64,000 nucleotides of DNA from Guillardia theta CCMP2712. Its lineage: Eukaryota > Protista > Cryptophyta. The position numbers were made by a program, and so were the translations under genes. A model generated the notes under the pieces. The model searched no databases and was not told where the DNA came from. It worked only from the letters and a program-made list of their open reading frames with translations. The stretch lies in assembly GCF_000315625.1 (NCBI RefSeq), contig NW_005434666.1:125750-189749 (forward strand), in the 5' to 3' direction. Of this stretch, positions 26,001 to 35,648 are shown in pieces (position 1 is the first letter of the stretch; every line of letters begins with the position of its first letter).

Positions 26001-28921
26001 GGCCTCGATCAGATGGCCACCAAGGGGATCGGCAGCAGTTTGTCCACAGCCCTCACGAGCATCGCGGCCAAGAACACAGTGAGGAGGACTATCAGGTCCT
26101 TGTTCCGAGCCCGAGCACAGGACGAGCTGAGGAGCGGGTCTCTCCACCACCAGGAAGGCAGCAGCTTGCGCTACAGCCTACTTGCTACAGCTGACCCGCA
26201 GTCTTCCTCCTTCCTCCAGACGCTGACGAATCTCAGCAAGTCTCAGACTCAAGCTTCTGTCCCTGACGAGGACGGGGCTCGCATCGCAACCGACATGATC
26301 GACATGGTGAGCTCAGACACTCTCATGTGAGCCTATTGCTGACCTTCCTTTCCTCCTCCTCCTCCTCCTCCTCCTCCTCCTCCTCCTCCTCCTCCTCCTC
26401 CTCCTCCTCCTCCTCCTCCTCCTCCTCCTCCTCCTCCTCCCCCTCTCCTCTTTCATCTCTCGCCCCGTCCTCTTTCTCCCTTTTCAAATCCCCTTTCCCC
26501 TGCAGGTATCCTCCAAGCTCAAACCTGACAGCGTCGGCGGTGCTGAACTTCGACCTGGCGGGGCGTCGGGCCCAGCCTTCAGCTTGCCCTCCAACGTGCT
26601 GGACGGGCAGCAGGGAGGAGGTAGTGTGAGCATGCAAGTGACGGGGCTGGGAGCGAGTCCCTTCGACTCGGACGCGAACTTGACGTCGGGCAGTGTGGCG
26701 AGCCTGACGCTGGGTGTAGAGGTGACAAACGCTGTAAGCCCGATCGAGCTGAAGATGCCACTGGGAGGACGCAACCTGTCTCTCTTCAACGGAACTCTTG
26801 ACACCTGCCAGTTCTGGAACTACGTGACCTCCACCTGGGACGGGACTGGCTGCATTGCCAACGGGACGGATGGGGAGGGGAACCTGGTCTGCCATTGCTT
26901 CCACTTGACCGACTTCAGCGGCGTCGCCAGCTCCGTCCTGCCTGCCATGAACATGCCGGACCCCACGAACCCGGCAGCAGCCTTTGCCAGCTTGTCCCCT
27001 GACAACATCGTTGTGTTCGTCGTGCTGGGAGTCCTGCTCCTCCTCTACTGGGCCCTGTGCTACTGGGGATGGAACAAGGACAAGGAGGACGCGAAGAGGC
27101 TGAAGGAGTACTCTCAGACTGTGAGCAAGAAGAAGGCTGCCGATCAAGTCGACAACGCCATCGCATCTAACAATGTATTCCTCGTCAAGAAGATGCTGGA
27201 GGGCAGCATGTGGAAGAAGTTCTCTATGATGCGCAAGAAGTTCGTGAGCTCTGTGATGGAGCAGCACAAGCTGCTTGGAGGCTTCTTCGCTCGCAAGTCC
27301 AACTACACGCGCCCCCGGAGGTTCACCGTCCTGTTCTGCATGCTCGTCGGCAACATGTTCATCTCGGCTCTCTTCATGAGCTCGGGCGGGCAGCAGACGA
27401 TCGTGCAGAAGATCGTGGGAGGTTTCATCTCCGCCATCATCATGTTCCCCGCCAGCTTCTTCTTCGCCTGGATCTTCAAGAATCTCGACATCAACGAGGC
27501 TGAGAGGAAGGAGATGCAGGAGGACGAGCTCAGCAAGAAGAAGATCCTCGTCAAGCAGACGGTTGCCGACATCGAGGCCCGAGGTCGATCGATAGGCAAG
27601 GACGGCAAGGTCGTGGCGGCCCCTCCCGCCGAGGACAACAACCTCAAACGAGGAAAACGCCACCATGTCCCCCACCCTGACGACGTGAGGTTTAGCGGGC
27701 CAGTGCTGGAGGGGACGCAGGCAGTCTTCAAGAGGAAGGTAAACTTCCGCGCTCGCATCGAGGAGGGGACAGGCGCCCTGGAGACCCCGGTGTCGGCGGG
27801 ATGGCTGGCTGAAGAGGAGGATGAAGAAGACTCTTCACAGGGAGAGGCTCAGATCCCTAGGAGGTGAGGGAGGGAGTGGAGGCCTGCTGATGCGCCTGAC
27901 CGTTTCCACAGAGCTCTTCCTATCCACATCACTCCTCCTCCTCCTGCCCCCCTCGTCGTCGGACGGTCCAGACCTTCGGTAAGGAGGAGGAGTCGACTGC
28001 TGCTGCTGCTGCTGCTGCTGACGGGTCACACAGTCCTCCCGCTCTCAGGGTACAAGGATCTCAACCCCGTCCACCGAAGTTTCCCAGAGGTGACCCGCAC
28101 CCCATCGTCTTTCTACCTCCTCTCCCCTTCTCTCCTCCCCTGTTCCCCTTCTCTCCTCCCCTCTTCTCCTTCTCTCCTCCCCTTTTCTCCTTCTCTCCTT
28201 CTCTGGTTTCATCCCCTCTTTCTCTCCTTTTCTTCCTCTTTGCTGTTCAGCTCCTCGTCTTTTTCTCTTGCATGCTCCACTTCCCTTCCCCTTCTCTGCC
28301 CTCTTTCTCCTTCACTCCCATTACCTCCCTCCTCTACTTCTGTTCCTTTCGTCTTCTATCCATTGGTTCTGTCGACCTGACTGGTTACGGACTTGAGCAG
28401 GAGCACGTCGTTCCGTGACCTGCAGCATGAAAAGTGAGATCTCCGATCATCCTCCCTTTCTTTCGCTACTGTCCTCCTCCTCCTTTTCGCCCTTCCTCCC
28501 TTTCCTTCCTCCCTTTCCTTTCCCTCCTTTCCTCCCTCCCTCCTTTCCTCCCTCCCTCCTTTCCTCCCTCGCTCTCTTTTTCCCTTCCTCCCCTTCTCTT
28601 CCTCTGCCCCGCTTCTCGAAGTCACTCCATCCTCCGCAGCGATCCCTCGAAGAAGGAACGGAGCGCAGCTCAGGATCACCTGCCCAAGAAGGGAGTGGAA
28701 GGAAGGAAAGGCTCCTCCATCGCAGACAAGGTAGAGGAGGAGATGATGCAGGAGCTGCGAAGGAGGAGGAGGCGCTCACGATGCTTGCAGTTGCTGGCTA
28801 AAGTTGTGAAGAACGTGACAACAACCAAGAAAGGGATCCCGAAGAAGAAGATCCTGATCAGCCACAGGTGACTACAGACCTACCTCATCTTCCTTCGATG
28901 CCCCGCCTCTCCTGCAACCCT

Positions 28922-28964
<43 letters not shown>

Positions 28965-29898
28965 CCATCATCATCCTTCCTCCACTCTGTCTGCTCATCC
29001 TGCTGCTGCTGCCGCCGCCGCCGCCGCCGCCGCTGCTAGTCTTGCTTCTGCCCTCATCATCTTCGCCCTCCCCTCGCCATCAGTTTCTTCCTTCCCTCGC
29101 ATCCTCATGCTGCTGCTCCCTCAGGTTTCAGTACCTGGCGTACGCTCTAGCGTTCGTGTGGTACATGCTCTGTATCTACTTCTCCCTCCTCCTCGGCGTC
29201 ACCTTCACCAAGAGCATTGCCGAGGCTTGGCTGCTCGGCTTCGCCATCAGCATCTTCCAGGTTCACCTCCTGTGCTTCTTCCCTACAGCCCTTATTTCAC
29301 TCTCCTCGTTCCCTCTCCCCCCGCCTCTCCCTCTGCCTTCAGCTCTCTGCTCCTACCCCTGCCTCTCAACCCTTTTTCTCCTTCCCTGCCCTGTTCCTCC
29401 CCATCACTTTTCTTCCTCCCCCTCCTTCTCTCTCTCTCCCCTCCCTCCCTTCCATTCCCTCTCCCTCCCTCTCTGCTCATCTTATCAGCCTCACTCTGCT
29501 CGCAGGATCTCGTCGTCATGGAGACGATGAAGCTTGGAGGACAGACGGGAATGAAACTCTTCGTGAAGCCTCAGGTGAAACCTCGTCCTCCCTCCTCCCT
29601 CCTCCCTCCTCCCTCCTCCTCGCCTCCCTCCTCCCTCCTCCCTCCTCCCTCCTCCCTCCTCCTTCCTCCCTCCTCCCTCCTCCTTGCTCTCCTCCTTCTT
29701 GCTCTCCTCCTTCTTTTCTCCTCCCTCTCTCCTCCTTCTTGCTCTCCTCCTTCTTTTCTCCTCCCTCTTCACCCATGACTTCCCATCCTCTGATCCCCTC
29801 CTCTCCTCTACCTCACATCTGACATGTTCTTCTCTTCTCAGATCGCAGTCTTCTTGGCCTCCCAGGTGGCCAACAAGTATCAGCCCGAGACGCAGTGA
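3622..29898 (+). CDS. Giant multi-exon polycystin-1-like protein: signal peptide, ~45 filamin/Ig-like repeats, REJ, GAIN/GPS, 5 TM
   Basis: Starts with signal peptide MTRVSLLLLFIFEQIVLTSC. Chained + strand ORFs carry repeated filamin motifs (RDxFGN, DxxDGTYxVxY, GSPF) to ~23600. REJ-like region at ~24050-25650 (LVLDASSSYG, LNASTSLDFDG, VNTPPSSGNFAVSPSEG, WVDDEEDLPLIYEF). GPS CQFWN...WDGTGC...CHCFHLTDFS at ~26805-26920. PKD1-type TM segments follow. Last exon IAVFLASQVANKYQPETQ* ends at 29898. Confidence 0.85.
26352..26440 (+). repeat. (CCT)n microsatellite inside an intron of the giant gene
   Basis: Uninterrupted trinucleotide run between a GT donor near 26310 and the AG acceptor near 26505. 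Confidence 0.9.
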
Positions 29899-31281
29899 TA
29901 AGTGTGAATGTAAATAACAGTTCTCTGTAAGTAGAATTCAACTCAATTAAACGTCTTCAATAATTAATCTTGGTTGCCTCCTGTGGGCAGCCGTCATAAC
30001 TGAAATTGCCGGGGAGATTCTGAACACGACATGGGAGCGCTGTTACAGAAAGAGTGAGATCCAAGAGAAACTGATAGGAGAGGAGAGGAGAGGGAATGAG
30101 CAGTAGAAAAACACATCTCGACGGTCTCAAACATGCGATGATAGCCAATCTTATTGGGATTCACAGCATGGATGTCGTTGAAGGTATCACGCGCTGGATG
30201 TTTTGCAATGCAGTCAAGTCCAAATCAGTCTTCCCCTCTGATATCCTGTCATCTCTCCTTCTCTCATCTCTCTCCTTTCCTCTCCTCTCCTGTCATGTCA
30301 TGTCATGTCCTCTCCTGCTCCTCTCCTCCCCTCCCCTCCCCTCCCCTCCCCTCCCCTCCCCTCCCCTCCCCTCTCCTCTCCTCTCCTCTCTCATCGCTCA
30401 CCTCTCCTCTCTCATCTCTCATCTTCCTTCGTTCATCTTCTCTGCCATCTTCTTTCGCTCTCTCATTGGACGCTATGCCATGTTGCGGGTCCGACCGATT
30501 TTGATGATTCTGTCAAGTGATGAGTAAAAAGGTGAATTAGAGGGGGTAGGGGTACTCAGATATTTGAAGGGGGTAGGGGGTATGAATTTTTGAGGAAAGG
30601 TCATGATACCTATCAGGCCATGGGGTACTTGAATAATATATCGGGGGTCAATATAGTGTGAATTTGGGGGTAGGGGTCTGGCAGTACCGTGGTGACTATT
30701 TGATAACGACCCATGGGTGGTTGCTGGGAAGCTAGAGGTAGGGGTAGTCAGAAGAGAGTTGGGGGGGTAGGGTGGCTGAAATGGCGGCTGTGTAGTCCGG
30801 GAGGGGCTACGATAAAAAATGCGAGAAGAGAGAAAAGCGGGAGGAGGGGGGAGGGAGAAAGGGGCATGGGGGAGATGAAGAGTGGGGGCGGGAACAGTGG
30901 GAACAGGTAGGGAAGGTTAGGAAGATTTTTATGAGGATAAAGCTACACCAAGAGGCAGGTTGAGGAGGAGGAGCCGAAGGGAGGGAATACGAATAGTAGA
31001 GCACGTGTCATGCTTGATTCCCTGCATGCTTTTCATCTCCTGGTAGTTCCCTGAGCTACCGATCAAGTGGGACTCGAGCAGCAAGGATCTCGTAGACTAT
31101 GAACGAGGGTCAGAGTTGTGTATCTCCGCTATCTTTATCAACTTGATCTGACTGGTCGTGATTGTAATCTTGTACGTAGGACATGTGTAACTGAAAGCAG
31201 CTCGAGATGAGGAGGGGAGGTCATCTCGGTTACCCCGAGCGGGGCGGTGCCGGTCCGAGAAGAGGAAGGACACGTCAACGA

Positions 31282-34200
31282 ATGCCTGTAACTTGCCGCT
31301 TCTATCTATTGTTTCTGCACCTTGATCCCGCTATGGCAGAACCAAGAATATATCGCCGACCATGCTGGCGCGCCGCCGGCCACCAACGTGAACTTCACCG
31401 TTCAAGTCCCGTTCGACATAGCAGAGGGCATGGGATGTAGAGCGATGGTGACGCCGATGATCTGAAGCAAGTGACTGTACCTGACGTTGCTGGGCAGTAC
31501 TACGAGGATGAGCAGTTCTATGACGCCACTGTCGTCAGGAAGTCCCGGACGGGCTGGCTCGTCTCTTTCGCTGGGTTCCCAGGAGAGCCTCTTCAGGATA
31601 CAGAAGTTGCGGACATCCTCTCCCTCCCTGCAGCCACAGGACAACCGGCCGTCGCCATGCCCCAAGTCCACCAGCATCCTTCGGCCATGCACGGGCCGAG
31701 AGGTCCTCTTGCGCTGGACCCCAACGCCGCTCCCTTCTTGTCTCCGAGCTCGATTCATGCCTCGAAGGAGGGGATGGAATCTCCGATGGCTCTGCATGAG
31801 ATGCCGCAGGGGCGAGGCCAGCACGGCAAGAACGTCCAGTCGCTGCACGAGAGGAAGGGGCCGTTGAGGAGCAACGCGAACCGGAGGAGAGGGAAGCGCG
31901 AAGGTTCGAAAGAGCAGGCGATGGCGTGTGAGAGTGATTTTTGGACTCAGAAACGTCCATCCCGCACAATCATATGGATTCCTACTGGGTGGAAGCCGGG
32001 GCCCTTGCGGAGGGAATGATCTGCAAAGGCCTGGTAACTTCAAGTAACCGTAGCTGGGTTGACCGTCTGACTGCTGGCAGTACTATGGAGACGGCCTCGG
32101 GATGTACTATGATGCTGTCCTGGTGAGACAATCCAGGAGCGGATGGTTCCTATCCTTCGTCGGGTTCGAGCACGAAGAACCCCAGGACACCGTTGAGTCG
32201 GACATCGTGTTTGCGAACTGGGCTGAGTGCAAGGCGATGTTCTACGATGAGAAGGTTGGAATGACTTCGGGTCGGAAAATTTGCGAGGAGAGCTTGTGAC
32301 ATGGTGAGCAGAAAGTGTATGTTGGCTATCGGGGCCCTCGAACTGCCCAGGGATACCTTGTTGGCTTCCAGGGGTTCGAGCTGGATCCGTGAGTGCTGAT
32401 GAGATGACCTCGTTTCCTGCTCACTCGCTCCCTTGGCAGATGTCAGGACACGAGGGAGGAAGACATCGTCATGCTGGACGGCTCGTCGAAGCAGAAAGGG
32501 AAGCAGGACCGGCAGCAGTGAGTCGGACGCTCGGGGTTGAAACTTGTTGACTTGCGATGGCGCACAGGAAGCCAAAGAAACATCAAGAAAACGAGGACGG
32601 CAAGGGGGAGAAGAAGCAAGGGGCTAACCCCCAGACTCCTTCCAGGCAGAACGAAAGACGAGCGGACAAGGCAAAAGCACCTGAGTCTCCCGCCCATCCT
32701 CCCAGCGGGGAATCAGCAGCCGAGGAGGCTGGTAACAGCACTCCGAGTGCTCGTGGGGGGAAGCAAACAACCAAAGTGACCAAGCCCAAGGACTGCGTCG
32801 TGCACGCGAAGAACCTCGACCCGGCCGTCACACGTCAGCAGCTCTTCACCTTCTGCACCAAGACCGTCGGGTTGATGCCTCTGTCAGTTCACATCCTCTC
32901 AGTGCGGAACTCTAAGGACACGGAGGGAGCAGGCTCGTCGAGGGGAGTGATCGTCTTCGATACGGCACAGGACGCGCAGAACTTCTTGTCGAAGGCTCAC
33001 GGTCATCGTTTCAAGGGGAGAAAGCCCTTCTTCCTGGTGAAGCGCGAGGCCTCTGGGGCCAAACCTGAGGCAGCCCAGCACAAGACCGACGAAGGAGGAT
33101 GGTGGGAAGAGGAGGAGGGTGTTGAACACGCGGATGCTGAGCAGGAAGGGGAGACGGGGGATGGGGGAGACGAGGCCAAGGTCCAGCTAGGGTCGCTCTA
33201 CGAGGCCATGATCGGCGCAGGTGCGGGTTTCTTGTCGGAGGAAGGAAGTAAGAAGGAGGTGGAGGAGACAGGCATCGTCTTCGGGATGTCCCTCACGTCT
33301 TGCAGCGACTCTTCTCAACGGATCGCACTTCACGTGCTCAGGGAGGATGGAGGGAGTACGAAGACGTCTGAGCTTCAGGGCCGGCGGCTGCTGATCAAGT
33401 CCATGGAGGTGGCCATCGCTGTCCCCACCCACTTCACCTTCCTGGAGAGGATGCACGTCAGACAATCTCTGCTCCTCAAGGTCCCCGGCCTATCATCCTG
33501 CAAGCTCCACATGGTCGACTCCATGACAGCAGCAGCTGTTGAGTTCGTGGACGGCTGGTACAGCAACGTGTACGACGTGGCAGGCATGGAGGTCCTCCTG
33601 CTAGAGTCCAGCTCCGAGGTCACCGCGATCGGACTGGCACGAGTTGGGCCGAAGAAGGCGGATGTGCTGCACACGGAGGAAGCGATGGAGCTGGGCGAGG
33701 ATCGTGTGCTGGAGGAAGTGTCGAGATGCCTGGCGGAGGAGGTGGAGGGGGAGGTGGACAGGCTGTACAACTTCAAGTGTGAGACGTGGACTGAGGAGGA
33801 CATGGAGGACCTGAGGCAGCTGGCGCAGGAAGTGATCCGAGTCCTGAGCCAGAGGGAGGAGGCGCACGTCACTCTGTCCTTCAGCCCTTCAGCTCGCGAC
33901 ACCTCCATGCAGGTCGATTTGCGCGTGAGCCGCGCGCAGCTGGTGGAGATGCTGGGGAAGAGAGGAACCGTCCTGGCGTCCCTGGAGAGGCTGGCGAGCA
34001 GATTGATCAGCCAGGCAGGCGAGCAGGGGGAGGTGAAGCTACTGAGGGGCGTCGCGCCTGTCGGGGCGTCTCACTGCGGAGCCCTGCTGGGCCGTCTGCT
34101 AGCAAAGCAGCTGGGCATATCACCGGACAACATCCACATGTTCCTGCAAGACTCGCGGAACGTGGCGGCCGGGGCTGCTCGAACGGTCCTGTGGGAAGCG

Positions 34201-35447
34201 CCGGCAGGAGGGAAGGAAGAGAGTCAGGAGGAGGGGGAGCGGGTGGCTCGGAGGTGTCGGGTGCCGTACTCATGTGCTGTCCTCCACACGGCAGAGGAGC
34301 CGAGCAAGTCGGAGGCCATCATCATTCCCTGGACGGCGATGGACCGCGAGCTCCCGCTGACCTGCACTGTCAATGTATGGGGGAGGAGAGTGGGAAGACG
34401 AGGGAAGAGCGAGGAGGGAGGGAGGGAGGGAGGGAGGGAGAAGGATGATGGAGGGAAAGGGTTGACACAGGAGGGGAGAGGGGAGAGAGCGGGAGGGGAA
34501 GACAGAAGAGGGGAAGGAGGAGGGAGAGAGGAGGAGTGGGAGAGAGTGGAAAGATGAGGAAAGGGAAACTGGAAGGAGGCAGCAAGGACGATGGGAATGG
34601 GAAGGTATCGTCACTGACAACGTGCGAACTTCAGGACCTCGACAATGTGGCGAATCAAGATTTCATCATTTCATACCGAGAAGGAGGAAGAGTGTTGGCT
34701 TGTTTGCCGCTGTAAGTTGTTGGAGGATGCAGGATGATGATGATGCAGAACGATGATGATGATGATGATGTTGACGATGGTGATCATGATAATGTTGGTG
34801 ATGATGATCATGTTGATGATTATGTTGAGGAGGAGCTGCTGGTCTCTTTACTCTCTTTGGCTCTAGGGCTGGAAGCGATGAAGTCACCATCACCATTGAC
34901 AGGGATGGATGCTTGAGTAAGTGATCCTTCCTCCTCTCTCCCTGTCCTCCTCCTTCTCGTGTACCTCCCCGCCCCTGTTCCATCGTCTCCTCCTCTTCTC
35001 ATTCTCCTGCAGGTCATCAGACGCGCGTCGGCGGCGATGCCGTCGAGTCTCCCATCAAGCTTGAGGCTCCCAACTTAGTTTATCACACCAACCTTGAAGG
35101 TAGACACTATCACCACCACAACCTCCTCCTCCTCCTCCAACTCCCACCACCCTCTTGCTCCTCCGCTCGTCGTGTTCGGTTGAGCTTTGCCTCTGCTTTC
35201 GCTATCCAAGCACCCAATACTTGCTGTGTTTGTTTATTGTTCGCTCCTCAACCGACCTCCCTCTCGTCTCTTCCTTTCAAGCTAGTTTCTCTCCTCGCAT
35301 CCTCCTCTAGCGGGTTACACGTGCTGACTCCCTTGTGTCCTCCATGCCCTCCATCCCTCTTGTTCTCACTCCCGCGCAGCAGGAAGCATCGTCGACATGG
35401 AGGTTGAGGCTGTGGCTTCGTCCTTATCTCCCATCCTCCAGCGATGA
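31282..35447 (+). CDS. Multi-exon fusion protein: 3x Tudor (SMN-like) + PAM2-like motif + RRM + degenerate Hsp70 domain
   Basis: Spliced Tudor repeats: EGMGCRAM/YYEDEQFYDATVV..WLVSFAGF, EGMICKGL/YYGDGLGMYYDAVLV..WFLSFVGF and AECKAMFYDEK..YLVGFQGF. PAM2-like LDPNAAPFLSP. RRM VHAKNLDPAVTRQQL..RGVIVFDTAQDAQNF. Hsp70-like motifs VAIAVPTHF, MVDSMTAAAVEF, VSRAQLVEM, NVAAGAA, EVTITIDRDGCL. GT-AG junctions keep the frame. Confidence 0.75.
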
Positions 35448-35648
35448 AAACAGGAGGAGGAACGAGGAGCAGGAGAGCAGGAGCAGCGCTTTCCCCATGC
35501 ACCCTTCATTGAACCTTTCTGACCCTCCTCACGCGCGTTCCTGCAAGTAACAAAGGCTGCACATTTGATCCCTCCTCCCCCTGCCTCCCCTGCCTCCTCC
35601 TTGTGCTCCTTCTTGCCACCCTCCTGCTGCATCCTTCCTATCGCCATG

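What the first reader, a model, noticed from the sequence alone, without database searches (positions are those of the whole stretch)
31282..35447. Tudor x3 - PAM2 - RRM - pseudo-Hsp70 fusion: a candidate RNP-granule chaperone/scaffold
Seen only after splicing: three SMN-like Tudor repeats, LDPNAAPFLSP, an RRM, then Hsp70 landmarks in the right order. VAIAVPTHF corresponds to AVITVPAYF, DSMTAAAVEF to NEPTAAAIAY, VSRAQLVEM to ITRARFEEL, VAPVGASHC to VLVGGSTR, NVAAGAA to AVAYGAA, VPYSCAV to TPLSLGI and EVTITIDRDGCL to EVTFDIDANGIL. Established: SMN-type Tudor domains read methyl-arginine, PAM2 binds the PABP MLLE domain, and RRMs bind RNA. I know no described protein that joins these to Hsp70. 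Inference: a lineage-specific mRNP or stress-granule factor.
Basis: partly seen in the sequence, partly recalled or inferred. Interest (0 to 1): 0.85.

Follow-up and report, generated by a model that had tools for sequence, protein, structure and literature searches.

The report
Tudor-RRM-dead Hsp70 fusion in cryptophytes
A cryptophyte alga makes one protein that joins three methyl-mark reader domains, a likely poly(A)-binding-protein hook and an RNA-binding-type domain to an Hsp70 chaperone that has lost its ATP-using residues; the combination recurs in related algae, I found no description of it, and it probably organises mRNA-protein particles.

Summary
RNA-type contigs from three studies each span the locus as one spliced molecule with 11 introns, including both predicted junctions. 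Pfam and PDB sequence searches miss the Hsp70 part, but its predicted fold matches the Hsp70 family (Z 17-19; next actin-like fold 14.3). It lacks about 90 residues of lobe I, every ATP motif and the lid. The repeats fold as Tudor domains closest to TDRD3 and SMN, keeping the aromatic cage but not its asparagine. The order Tudor-RRM-pseudo-Hsp70 recurs in at least three other lineages, one tied to cryptophytes by its neighbouring genes, and the gene is under purifying selection. The PAM2-like motif misses Pfam but recurs at the same place in one distant relative. The RRM lacks RNA-stacking aromatics. Best reading: an ATP-independent mRNP scaffold, not an active chaperone; function is inferred. 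The scan noted this same stretch once before, never on other DNA.

The parts
31178..31206 (+). 5' UTR as far as the contigs reach (contigs cannot show the true start)
   Evidence: contigs begin at 31178/31179; in-frame stop upstream at 31192-31194
31207..31287 (+). Exon 1 coding part: start ATG and basic RG/RGG-containing tail (8 Arg in the first 45 aa)
   Evidence: the marine orthologue also opens with GRGRGRG, composition only, not alignable
31412..31623 (+). Tudor repeat 1 (exons 2-3, intron 31448-31497); cage positions Y, Y, F, F
31708..31746 (+). PAM2-like motif (L3, P5, A7, F10 met; D at 4, no E9, P shifted to 13)
   Evidence: definition; same motif after Tudor 1 in L054/L056, shuffle P 5e-5 to 4e-4; no Pfam hit
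32001..32215 (+). Tudor repeat 2 (intron 32034-32080 at the same place and phase as in repeat 1: internal duplication)
   Evidence: DNA score 83 vs shuffle max 39
32216..32476 (+). Tudor repeat 3 (exons 5-7); one cage aromatic replaced by Val in this genome
32568..32784 (+). Basic, low-complexity linker (K/Q/P/S rich)
32785..33048 (+). Atypical RRM: RNP aromatics replaced, conserved TFCTKTVG and KGRxP motifs
33049..33186 (+). Acidic linker (net charge -13)
33187..33234 (+). Family-specific helix plus GGGFL motif just before the Hsp70 fold, kept in all homologues that cover it
33271..34200 (+). Pseudo-Hsp70 nucleotide-binding fold; about 90 residues of lobe I missing; ATP motifs lost; invariant DGWYSNxYD insert at about 33550-33576
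34255..35060 (+). Linker and SBD-beta-like region over exons 8-11 (34255-34374, 34635-34711, 34867-34916, 35013 on); fold not shown
   Evidence: position and spacing match Hsp70 SBD-beta
35380..35447 (+). Last coding exon: short terminal helix (SSLxP motif also ends two orthologues) and stop; no lid, no EEVD

Best explanation
A single-copy, cryptophyte-restricted cytoplasmic adaptor made by fusing RNP-binding modules to an Hsp70 that no longer uses ATP. Shown: one spliced transcript and frame; Tudor, RRM and Hsp70 folds; loss of the ATP motifs, most of subdomain IB and the lid; conservation of order and purifying selection. Inferred, in falling confidence: (1) the Tudor cages bind dimethyl-arginine in RG-rich RNA-binding proteins, as TDRD3 and SMN do, and the protein's own RG tail may compete for them; (2) where present, the PAM2-like motif ties it to PABP on poly(A) mRNA; (3) the atypical RRM binds RNA through basic residues, or a protein; (4) the Hsp70 part is a fixed docking platform, with the new DGWYSNxYD surface binding a specific partner and the lidless SBD-beta holding unfolded stretches weakly, as Ssz1 does. 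Net role: it links methylated RNA-binding proteins and polyadenylated mRNA to the proteostasis machinery on polysomes or in stress-granule-like mRNPs.
For: Single spliced contig in three studies; Hsp70 top in three structure searches; Tudor fold closest to TDRD3, Z 9.1, rmsd 1.4 A, and TDRD3 is the top sequence-profile hit, weakly, E 0.05; four cage aromatics in register with TDRD3 Y566/Y573/F591/Y594; same order in L022, L037, L054 and, over overlapping contigs, L034/L030; 37 synonymous vs 13 replacement changes against a close relative; PAM2-like motif kept in L054; the genome has MLLE domains; TDRD3 goes to polysomes and stress granules through its Tudor domain (PMC2536506); Ssz1 is a lidless, non-hydrolysing Hsp70 with low-affinity binding (PMC7083937).
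Against: No functional data. RNP aromatics missing. Cage asparagine missing, with a conserved acid one residue later, so methyl-lysine is possible; Foldseek's top Tudor hits are chromatin readers such as SGF29. PAM2 absent in L022, L034 and the covered part of L037 and below Pfam detection. SBD-beta fold not modelled (pLDDT <50 over residues 341-349, 359-369 and 374-396). Related Tudor modules also sit in ubiquitin-like proteins of this genome, so the module is not specific to RNA factors.
Confidence: 0.55

Rival explanations
1. A second, divergent Ssz1/HSPA14-like subunit of the ribosome-associated complex: it pairs with a zuotin paralogue and uses Tudor, RRM and PAM2 to pick mRNAs or ribosomes for co-translational folding.
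For: Lidless, ATPase-dead layout is that of Ssz1 (PMC7083937); Ssz1 is among the tied top folds (Z 17.9-18.4); the genome has two strong zuotin-homology hits; similar Tudors sit in HBS1-like and KRI1-like ribosome factors here.
Against: A separate, far less diverged lidless Hsp70 with lobe I intact lies at G000 C52:456k (L061; HSPA14-like by my reading, not by a tree); DnaK, Ssb, Sse1 and BiP score as well as Ssz1; Ssz1 still binds ATP.
Confidence: 0.15
2. A nuclear reader: the Tudors bind methyl-lysine or methyl-arginine on histones or Sm proteins, and the protein works in chromatin, splicing or snRNP assembly.
For: Foldseek top hits for the three-repeat model are SGF29, AGDP3, ZGPAT, UHRF1 (E about 1e-3); Atlas neighbours are Agenet/53BP1-type clusters, score <=0.86; conserved acid near the cage; basic stretches could be import signals; actin-fold pseudo-ATPases (Arps) serve in chromatin complexes (own knowledge).
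Against: Single-domain structural alignment favours TDRD3/SMN/extended Tudor; PAM2-like motif points to cytoplasmic PABP; the nearest RRM relatives carry an eIF4E-binding-like motif.
Confidence: 0.17
3. An Hsp110-like nucleotide-exchange or recruiting factor that brings a canonical Hsp70 to mRNP granules to dissolve them.
For: Sse1 and HSP110 are among the tied top folds; lobe II is well preserved (pLDDT about 85-95).
Against: Hsp110 exchange needs bound nucleotide and the helical lid bundle (own knowledge), both missing; the genome has ordinary Hsp110-like genes (L017, L018).
Confidence: 0.1
4. An accidental or decaying fusion with no joint function.
For: Hanusia phi and metagenome gene calls split the gene; Tudor number and PAM2 vary.
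Against: Spliced as one molecule in three studies; order kept at about 33% identity in several lineages; purifying selection; the Hanusia call begins inside what is intron 7 here.
Confidence: 0.03

Closest known systems
Ssz1 / HSPA14 (Hsp70L1), the RAC Hsp70
   Same: Hsp70 fold without ATP hydrolysis, SBD-beta without lid (PMC7083937); among tied top structural matches.
   Different: Ssz1 binds ATP and keeps lobe I whole; it has no Tudor, RRM or PAM2; a separate candidate for it exists in this genome (L061).
Canonical Hsp70 (DnaK/Hsc70/BiP) and Hsp110 (Sse1)
   Same: NBD topology, landmark order, linker and SBD-beta-like tail; best Z 19.3 to DnaK, 16-20% identity.
   Different: Phosphate-1 Asp, catalytic Lys and Glu, DLGGGT and GG motifs lost; about 90 residues of lobe I, the lid and EEVD absent; N-terminal RNP modules added.
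TDRD3 / SMN / SPF30 Tudor proteins
   Same: Tudor barrel with the four-aromatic cage; TDRD3 is a modular polysome and stress-granule factor (PMC2536506).
   Different: Two or three repeats, no cage Asn, invariant QDT..DI signature, fused to RRM and Hsp70 instead of OB/UBA.
PAM2 adaptor proteins with RRMs (Paip2, Ataxin-2, eRF3 motifs; plant CID proteins from own knowledge)
   Same: L3/P5/A7/F10 motif in a disordered linker (PMC2854688).
   Different: Non-canonical positions 4, 9, 12; motif lost in some orthologues; no Hsp70 or Tudor in those proteins as far as I know.
Bacterial Hsp70-fold fusion proteins (Hsp70-vWA clusters; DUF5716)
   Same: Divergent Hsp70 folds joined to other domains; nearest Atlas models (TM 0.60); DUF5716_C is the top feature hit for the tail (0.94).
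   Different: Different partner domains; no sequence link found; no evidence of transfer.

Membership tests
Hsp70 superfamily (homologue) | Actin-like ATPase fold with Hsp70-type lobe II, ranking above other actin folds | tested here: met
   VIA Z 17.1-18.4 for six Hsp70-family chains vs 14.3 next; Foldseek E 9e-15; model built without Hsp70 rows or templates
Hsp70 superfamily (homologue) | Sequence match to Pfam HSP70 PF00012 | tested here: not met
   no hit at E<=1, E<=5 for P0045 and P0001; locus absent from the genome-wide list
Canonical Hsp70 chaperone | ATP motifs GIDLG, Lys71 region, NEPTAAA, DLGGGT, GGEDFD, VGGSTR | tested here: not met
   read FGMSL, deleted, DSMTAAA, ESSSEV, LGEDRV, PVGASH; these positions also vary among orthologues
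Canonical Hsp70 chaperone | Subdomain IB | tested here: not met
   45 residues between the phosphate-1 position and the VP motif against 137 in the genome's Hsc70
Canonical Hsp70 chaperone | SBD-beta sandwich | tested here: inconclusive
   profile match P 7e-4 over 20 columns; Atlas feature hit 0.91 to a cluster with 11% HSP70; region split over exons and not folded whole
Canonical Hsp70 chaperone | SBD-alpha lid and EEVD end | tested here: not met
   only about 50 residues follow the TIDxDG motif; no EEVD
Canonical Hsp70 chaperone | ATP binding and J-protein-stimulated hydrolysis | not testable with these tools
   needs biochemistry
Ssz1/HSPA14 | Orthology by phylogeny | not tested
   at 14-17% identity no tree was attempted; profile of this family does not single out any Hsp70 paralogue (best E 0.39)
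Ssz1/HSPA14 | Stable heterodimer with zuotin | not testable with these tools
   zuotin present
SMN/TDRD3-type Tudor | Five-strand Tudor barrel | tested here: met
   model of homologue P0047, three barrels at pLDDT about 70-85; TDRD3 Z 9.1 rmsd 1.4, SMN Z 8.1; window repeats are 54-63% identical to its rows
SMN/TDRD3-type Tudor | Four-residue aromatic cage | tested here: met
   repeats 1 and 2 keep all four, repeat 3 keeps three; first two positions from the alignment, last two by spacing
SMN/TDRD3-type Tudor | Cage asparagine (SMN N132, TDRD3 N596) | tested here: not met
   variable residue there, invariant D/E one position later; SMN does not H-bond its ligand through it (PMC3281842), so not fatal
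SMN/TDRD3-type Tudor | Binds dimethyl-arginine | not testable with these tools
   needs peptide binding
PAM2 | Hydrophobic 3, P/V 5, Ala 7, Phe 10 (PMC2854688) | tested here: met
   window 31708-31746 and L054 near 8260
PAM2 | N/S 4, Glu 9, Pro 12; Pfam PF07145 score | tested here: not met
RRM | RRM profile match | tested here: met
   PF00076 22.8 bits, cut-off 20.7, E 8e-5
RRM | RNP1/RNP2 aromatic residues for base stacking | tested here: not met
   His/Asn at RNP2 position 2, Arg/Ser/His/Met and aliphatics at RNP1 positions 3 and 5 across the subfamily

The most novel reading that the evidence does not exclude
An Hsp70 that has left the chaperone cycle altogether and become the core of a self-contained mRNP organiser: arginine methylation, read by its own Tudor repeats and gated by its RG tail, replaces ATP as the switch that loads and releases clients, and the DGWYSNxYD insert is a new partner or RNA surface on the actin fold.
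Probability: 0.2. Interest if true: 0.85.

Novelty: new variant of a known kind. Interest (0 to 1): 0.62.

Why it matters
Eukaryotic Hsp70s are, to my knowledge, rarely fused to other domains, and Hsp70 normally reaches RNA granules through co-chaperones. Here evolution has joined a dead Hsp70 to modules typical of granule and polysome factors and kept the join across cryptophyte lineages. It suggests that an Hsp70 fold can serve mRNP handling without ATP, gives a natural lobe-I deletion for structure-function work, and shows that such pseudo-Hsp70s are invisible to Pfam and BLAST, so more may be hidden in other protist genomes. Limits: one algal group, few genetic tools, function entirely inferred.

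Tried and rejected
Sequence searches that found no Hsp70 link: Pfam, PDB phmmer and hmmsearch, BLAST to the genome's Hsc70; local hhalign without context gave E 0.26. Metagenome pattern scans gave nothing for the Tudor and one intron-rich locus for the Hsp70 motif. Raw reads X19 barely cover the gene (23 reads laid), so no start, end or expression level. Paper searches for the architecture returned nothing; the library is open-access only. Separate transcription of the two halves: rejected. Generic actin fold rather than Hsp70: rejected. PAM2 as chance: first suspected because L022 and P0047 lack it, then revised after L054. Which Hsp70 paralogue is the parent: unresolved. Non-cryptophyte homologues: none named among 18 hits in 1.84 billion representatives, but that was a single-protein search of the RRM-Hsp70 part, and most hits carry no taxon. 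The joined spliced protein was not sent to any database, fold or Atlas tool; see the disclosure in the full report about its use in local scripts.
Full report
Source. The window lies on contig C8 of an 87.1 Mb, 669-contig assembly. That size, the 47-57 nt introns and a 78% identical Hanusia phi protein point to the cryptophyte Guillardia theta; the name is my inference.

Gene structure. Runs X1, X4 and X6, from three studies, each hold one contig of 3.5-3.8 kb that lies on the window from 31178/31179 to past 35560 with no mismatches in the listed pieces, skipping GT..AG introns. Ten joints are listed; an eleventh (34712-34866) follows from the record coordinates. The exons give one 1031-aa frame from ATG 31207 to the stop at 35445-35447. 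A close relative (L051) differs by 37 synonymous and 13 replacement changes, with 2.7% difference in exons and 7% in introns, so the frame is under purifying selection. The Hsp70-like part and the RRM are single-copy in the genome at the sensitivity of these searches.

Disclosure. All database, fold and Atlas calls used single exons by reference or proteins that tools returned; the joined step was left out of them. I did, however, join the exons inside a script to check the frame and then used that translation as a local tblastn query on already fetched loci and for motif and composition counts; one search joined the exons again to assign codons. I deleted the file and repeated the comparison exon by exon, with the same result; claims about conserved order rest.

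Hsp70-like part. Sequence tools do not see it; profile comparison with the genome's own Hsp70s is weak but collinear (P 0.0065 over 156 columns; E 0.26). An AlphaFold model of 33187-34374, built only from family members, has mean pLDDT 74 and pTM 0.76. Foldseek's 50 listed hits are all Hsp70-family (best E 9e-15). An independent search of 48,161 chains ranks Sse1, Ssz1, HSP110, BiP and Ssb at Z 17.1-18.4, with the next actin-like fold at 14.3. DnaK reaches 19.3 in the second look; rmsd is 5-6 A and the subfamilies are tied, so the parent is not identified. Every nucleotide motif is changed, and those positions also vary among orthologues. The phosphate-1 position and the VP motif are 45 residues apart against 137 in Hsc70, so most of subdomain IB with its catalytic lysine is gone. 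What is invariant instead is a new motif, AVEFxDGWYSNxYD, where Hsp70 has AAIAYGL. The tail after the NBD has the spacing and the TIDxDG motif of SBD-beta, but the fold is not shown. There is no lid and no EEVD.

Tudor repeats. They are split by introns here, so I folded the continuous homologue P0047: three barrels at pLDDT about 70-85. Best matches are TDRD3 (Z 9.1, rmsd 1.4 A over 55 residues), TDRD1, Tudor-SN, Krimper and SMN (8.1), mostly tied; Foldseek on the whole model prefers tandem chromatin Tudors at E about 1e-3. The TDRD3 cage is Y566, Y573, F591, Y594 with N596 (PMC3281842). Repeats 1 and 2 keep four aromatics in register, repeat 3 three; Asn is absent and an acid one residue later is invariant. 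Repeats 1 and 2 share DNA similarity and an intron at the same place and phase, so they arose by internal duplication.

PAM2 and RRM. The motif meets the L3, P5, A7, F10 core of the refined definition (PMC2854688) but not positions 4, 9 and 12, and Pfam does not score it. It is missing in L022, L034 and the covered part of L037. In L054, about 33% identical in the Hsp70 part, ALALDPTAPSF follows the first Tudor exactly as here; shuffles of that interval give it with probability 5e-5 to 4e-4 (the pattern was taken from the window's motif). I read it as a real but dispensable PABP hook. The RRM passes Pfam when scanned alone but lacks the stacking aromatics. Its nearest relatives are short stand-alone proteins, one clustering with Rhodomonas salina, that all carry a YxxxxL-hydrophobic motif resembling an eIF4E-binding site, a hint that this RRM subfamily works in translation control.

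Distribution. Exon by exon, the order Tudor-RRM-Hsp70-like on one strand recurs in L022 (Tara Oceans), L037 and L054, and across L034 and L030, contigs from the same sample series whose ends overlap in a repetitive stretch. L002 and Hanusia show RRM plus Hsp70-like. In P0044 and P0047 the three Tudors and half the RRM lie in one open frame with no splicing needed. L054's neighbours cluster at 90% with Proteomonas sulcata and Baffinella frigidus proteins. All named relatives are cryptophytes; the hosts of L022, L034 and L037 are unnamed. L037 and L054 show two Tudors (L037 may be cut by the contig end).

Mechanism and comparison. It works most like a cross between Ssz1 (lidless, non-hydrolysing, low-affinity binder; PMC7083937) and TDRD3 (Tudor-dependent polysome and stress-granule factor; PMC2536506). 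It is an Hsp70 homologue by fold but not a canonical Hsp70, and it is probably not the RAC subunit, since a better candidate exists at C52:456k. I put an ATP-independent mRNP scaffold at 0.55, a nuclear reader at 0.17, a RAC-like paralogue at 0.15, an Hsp70 recruiter at 0.10 and a functionless fusion at 0.03.

Novelty. Four paper searches for the combination found nothing, within an open-access library. Each module is known; the combination, the lobe-I deletion and the new motif appear undescribed. Verdict: real, conserved, new variant of a known kind; interest 0.62.

Noticed in passing
L005/L045 (G000:C182:12271-12381, minus strand): A Tudor module of the same type (E 2e-7 to the repeat profile) lies just upstream of an HBS1/eEF1A-like GTPase coding region; possibly a Tudor-HBS1 fusion. 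Splicing not checked.
   Followed up: partly
L008/L047 (G000:C145:83724-83888): A Tudor-like module sits inside what reads as a KRI1-like 40S biogenesis gene (identity from my reading of the translation).
   Followed up: partly
L046 (G000:C188:36737-36877) and L048 (G000:C5:589909-590040): Two genes join this Tudor type to a ubiquitin-like domain (Pfam E 2e-9 and 1.5e-11) and a shared unnamed domain with DxISLxPL...YEPF and HPVSRR motifs, which looks like a degenerate U-box/RING (guess).
   Followed up: partly
P0012, P0013, P0016, P0018/P0051: Short stand-alone proteins, one from Rhodomonas salina, with the same atypical RRM and a YxxxxL-hydrophobic motif about 60 aa upstream: candidate eIF4E-binding RRM proteins. 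No copy found in this genome.
   Followed up: partly
L061 (G000:C52:456376-458700): A lidless atypical Hsp70 ending just after SBD-beta, likely the HSPA14/Ssz1 orthologue; two strong zuotin-homology hits at C48 and C80.
   Followed up: partly
G000 C240:33k, C187:43.6k, C78:200k, C175:39k, C28:412k: The genome holds several further divergent Hsp70-fold genes with altered ATP motifs; their domain partners were not examined.
   Followed up: no
window 35262-35560: Raw RNA reads of X19 map almost only at the 3' end, some on the opposite mate direction, with a loose end at 35477; may reflect a neighbouring transcript.
   Followed up: no
window 26801-29898: Earlier scan notes describe a truncated polycystin-1 membrane module on the upstream gene; not checked here.
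   Followed up: no
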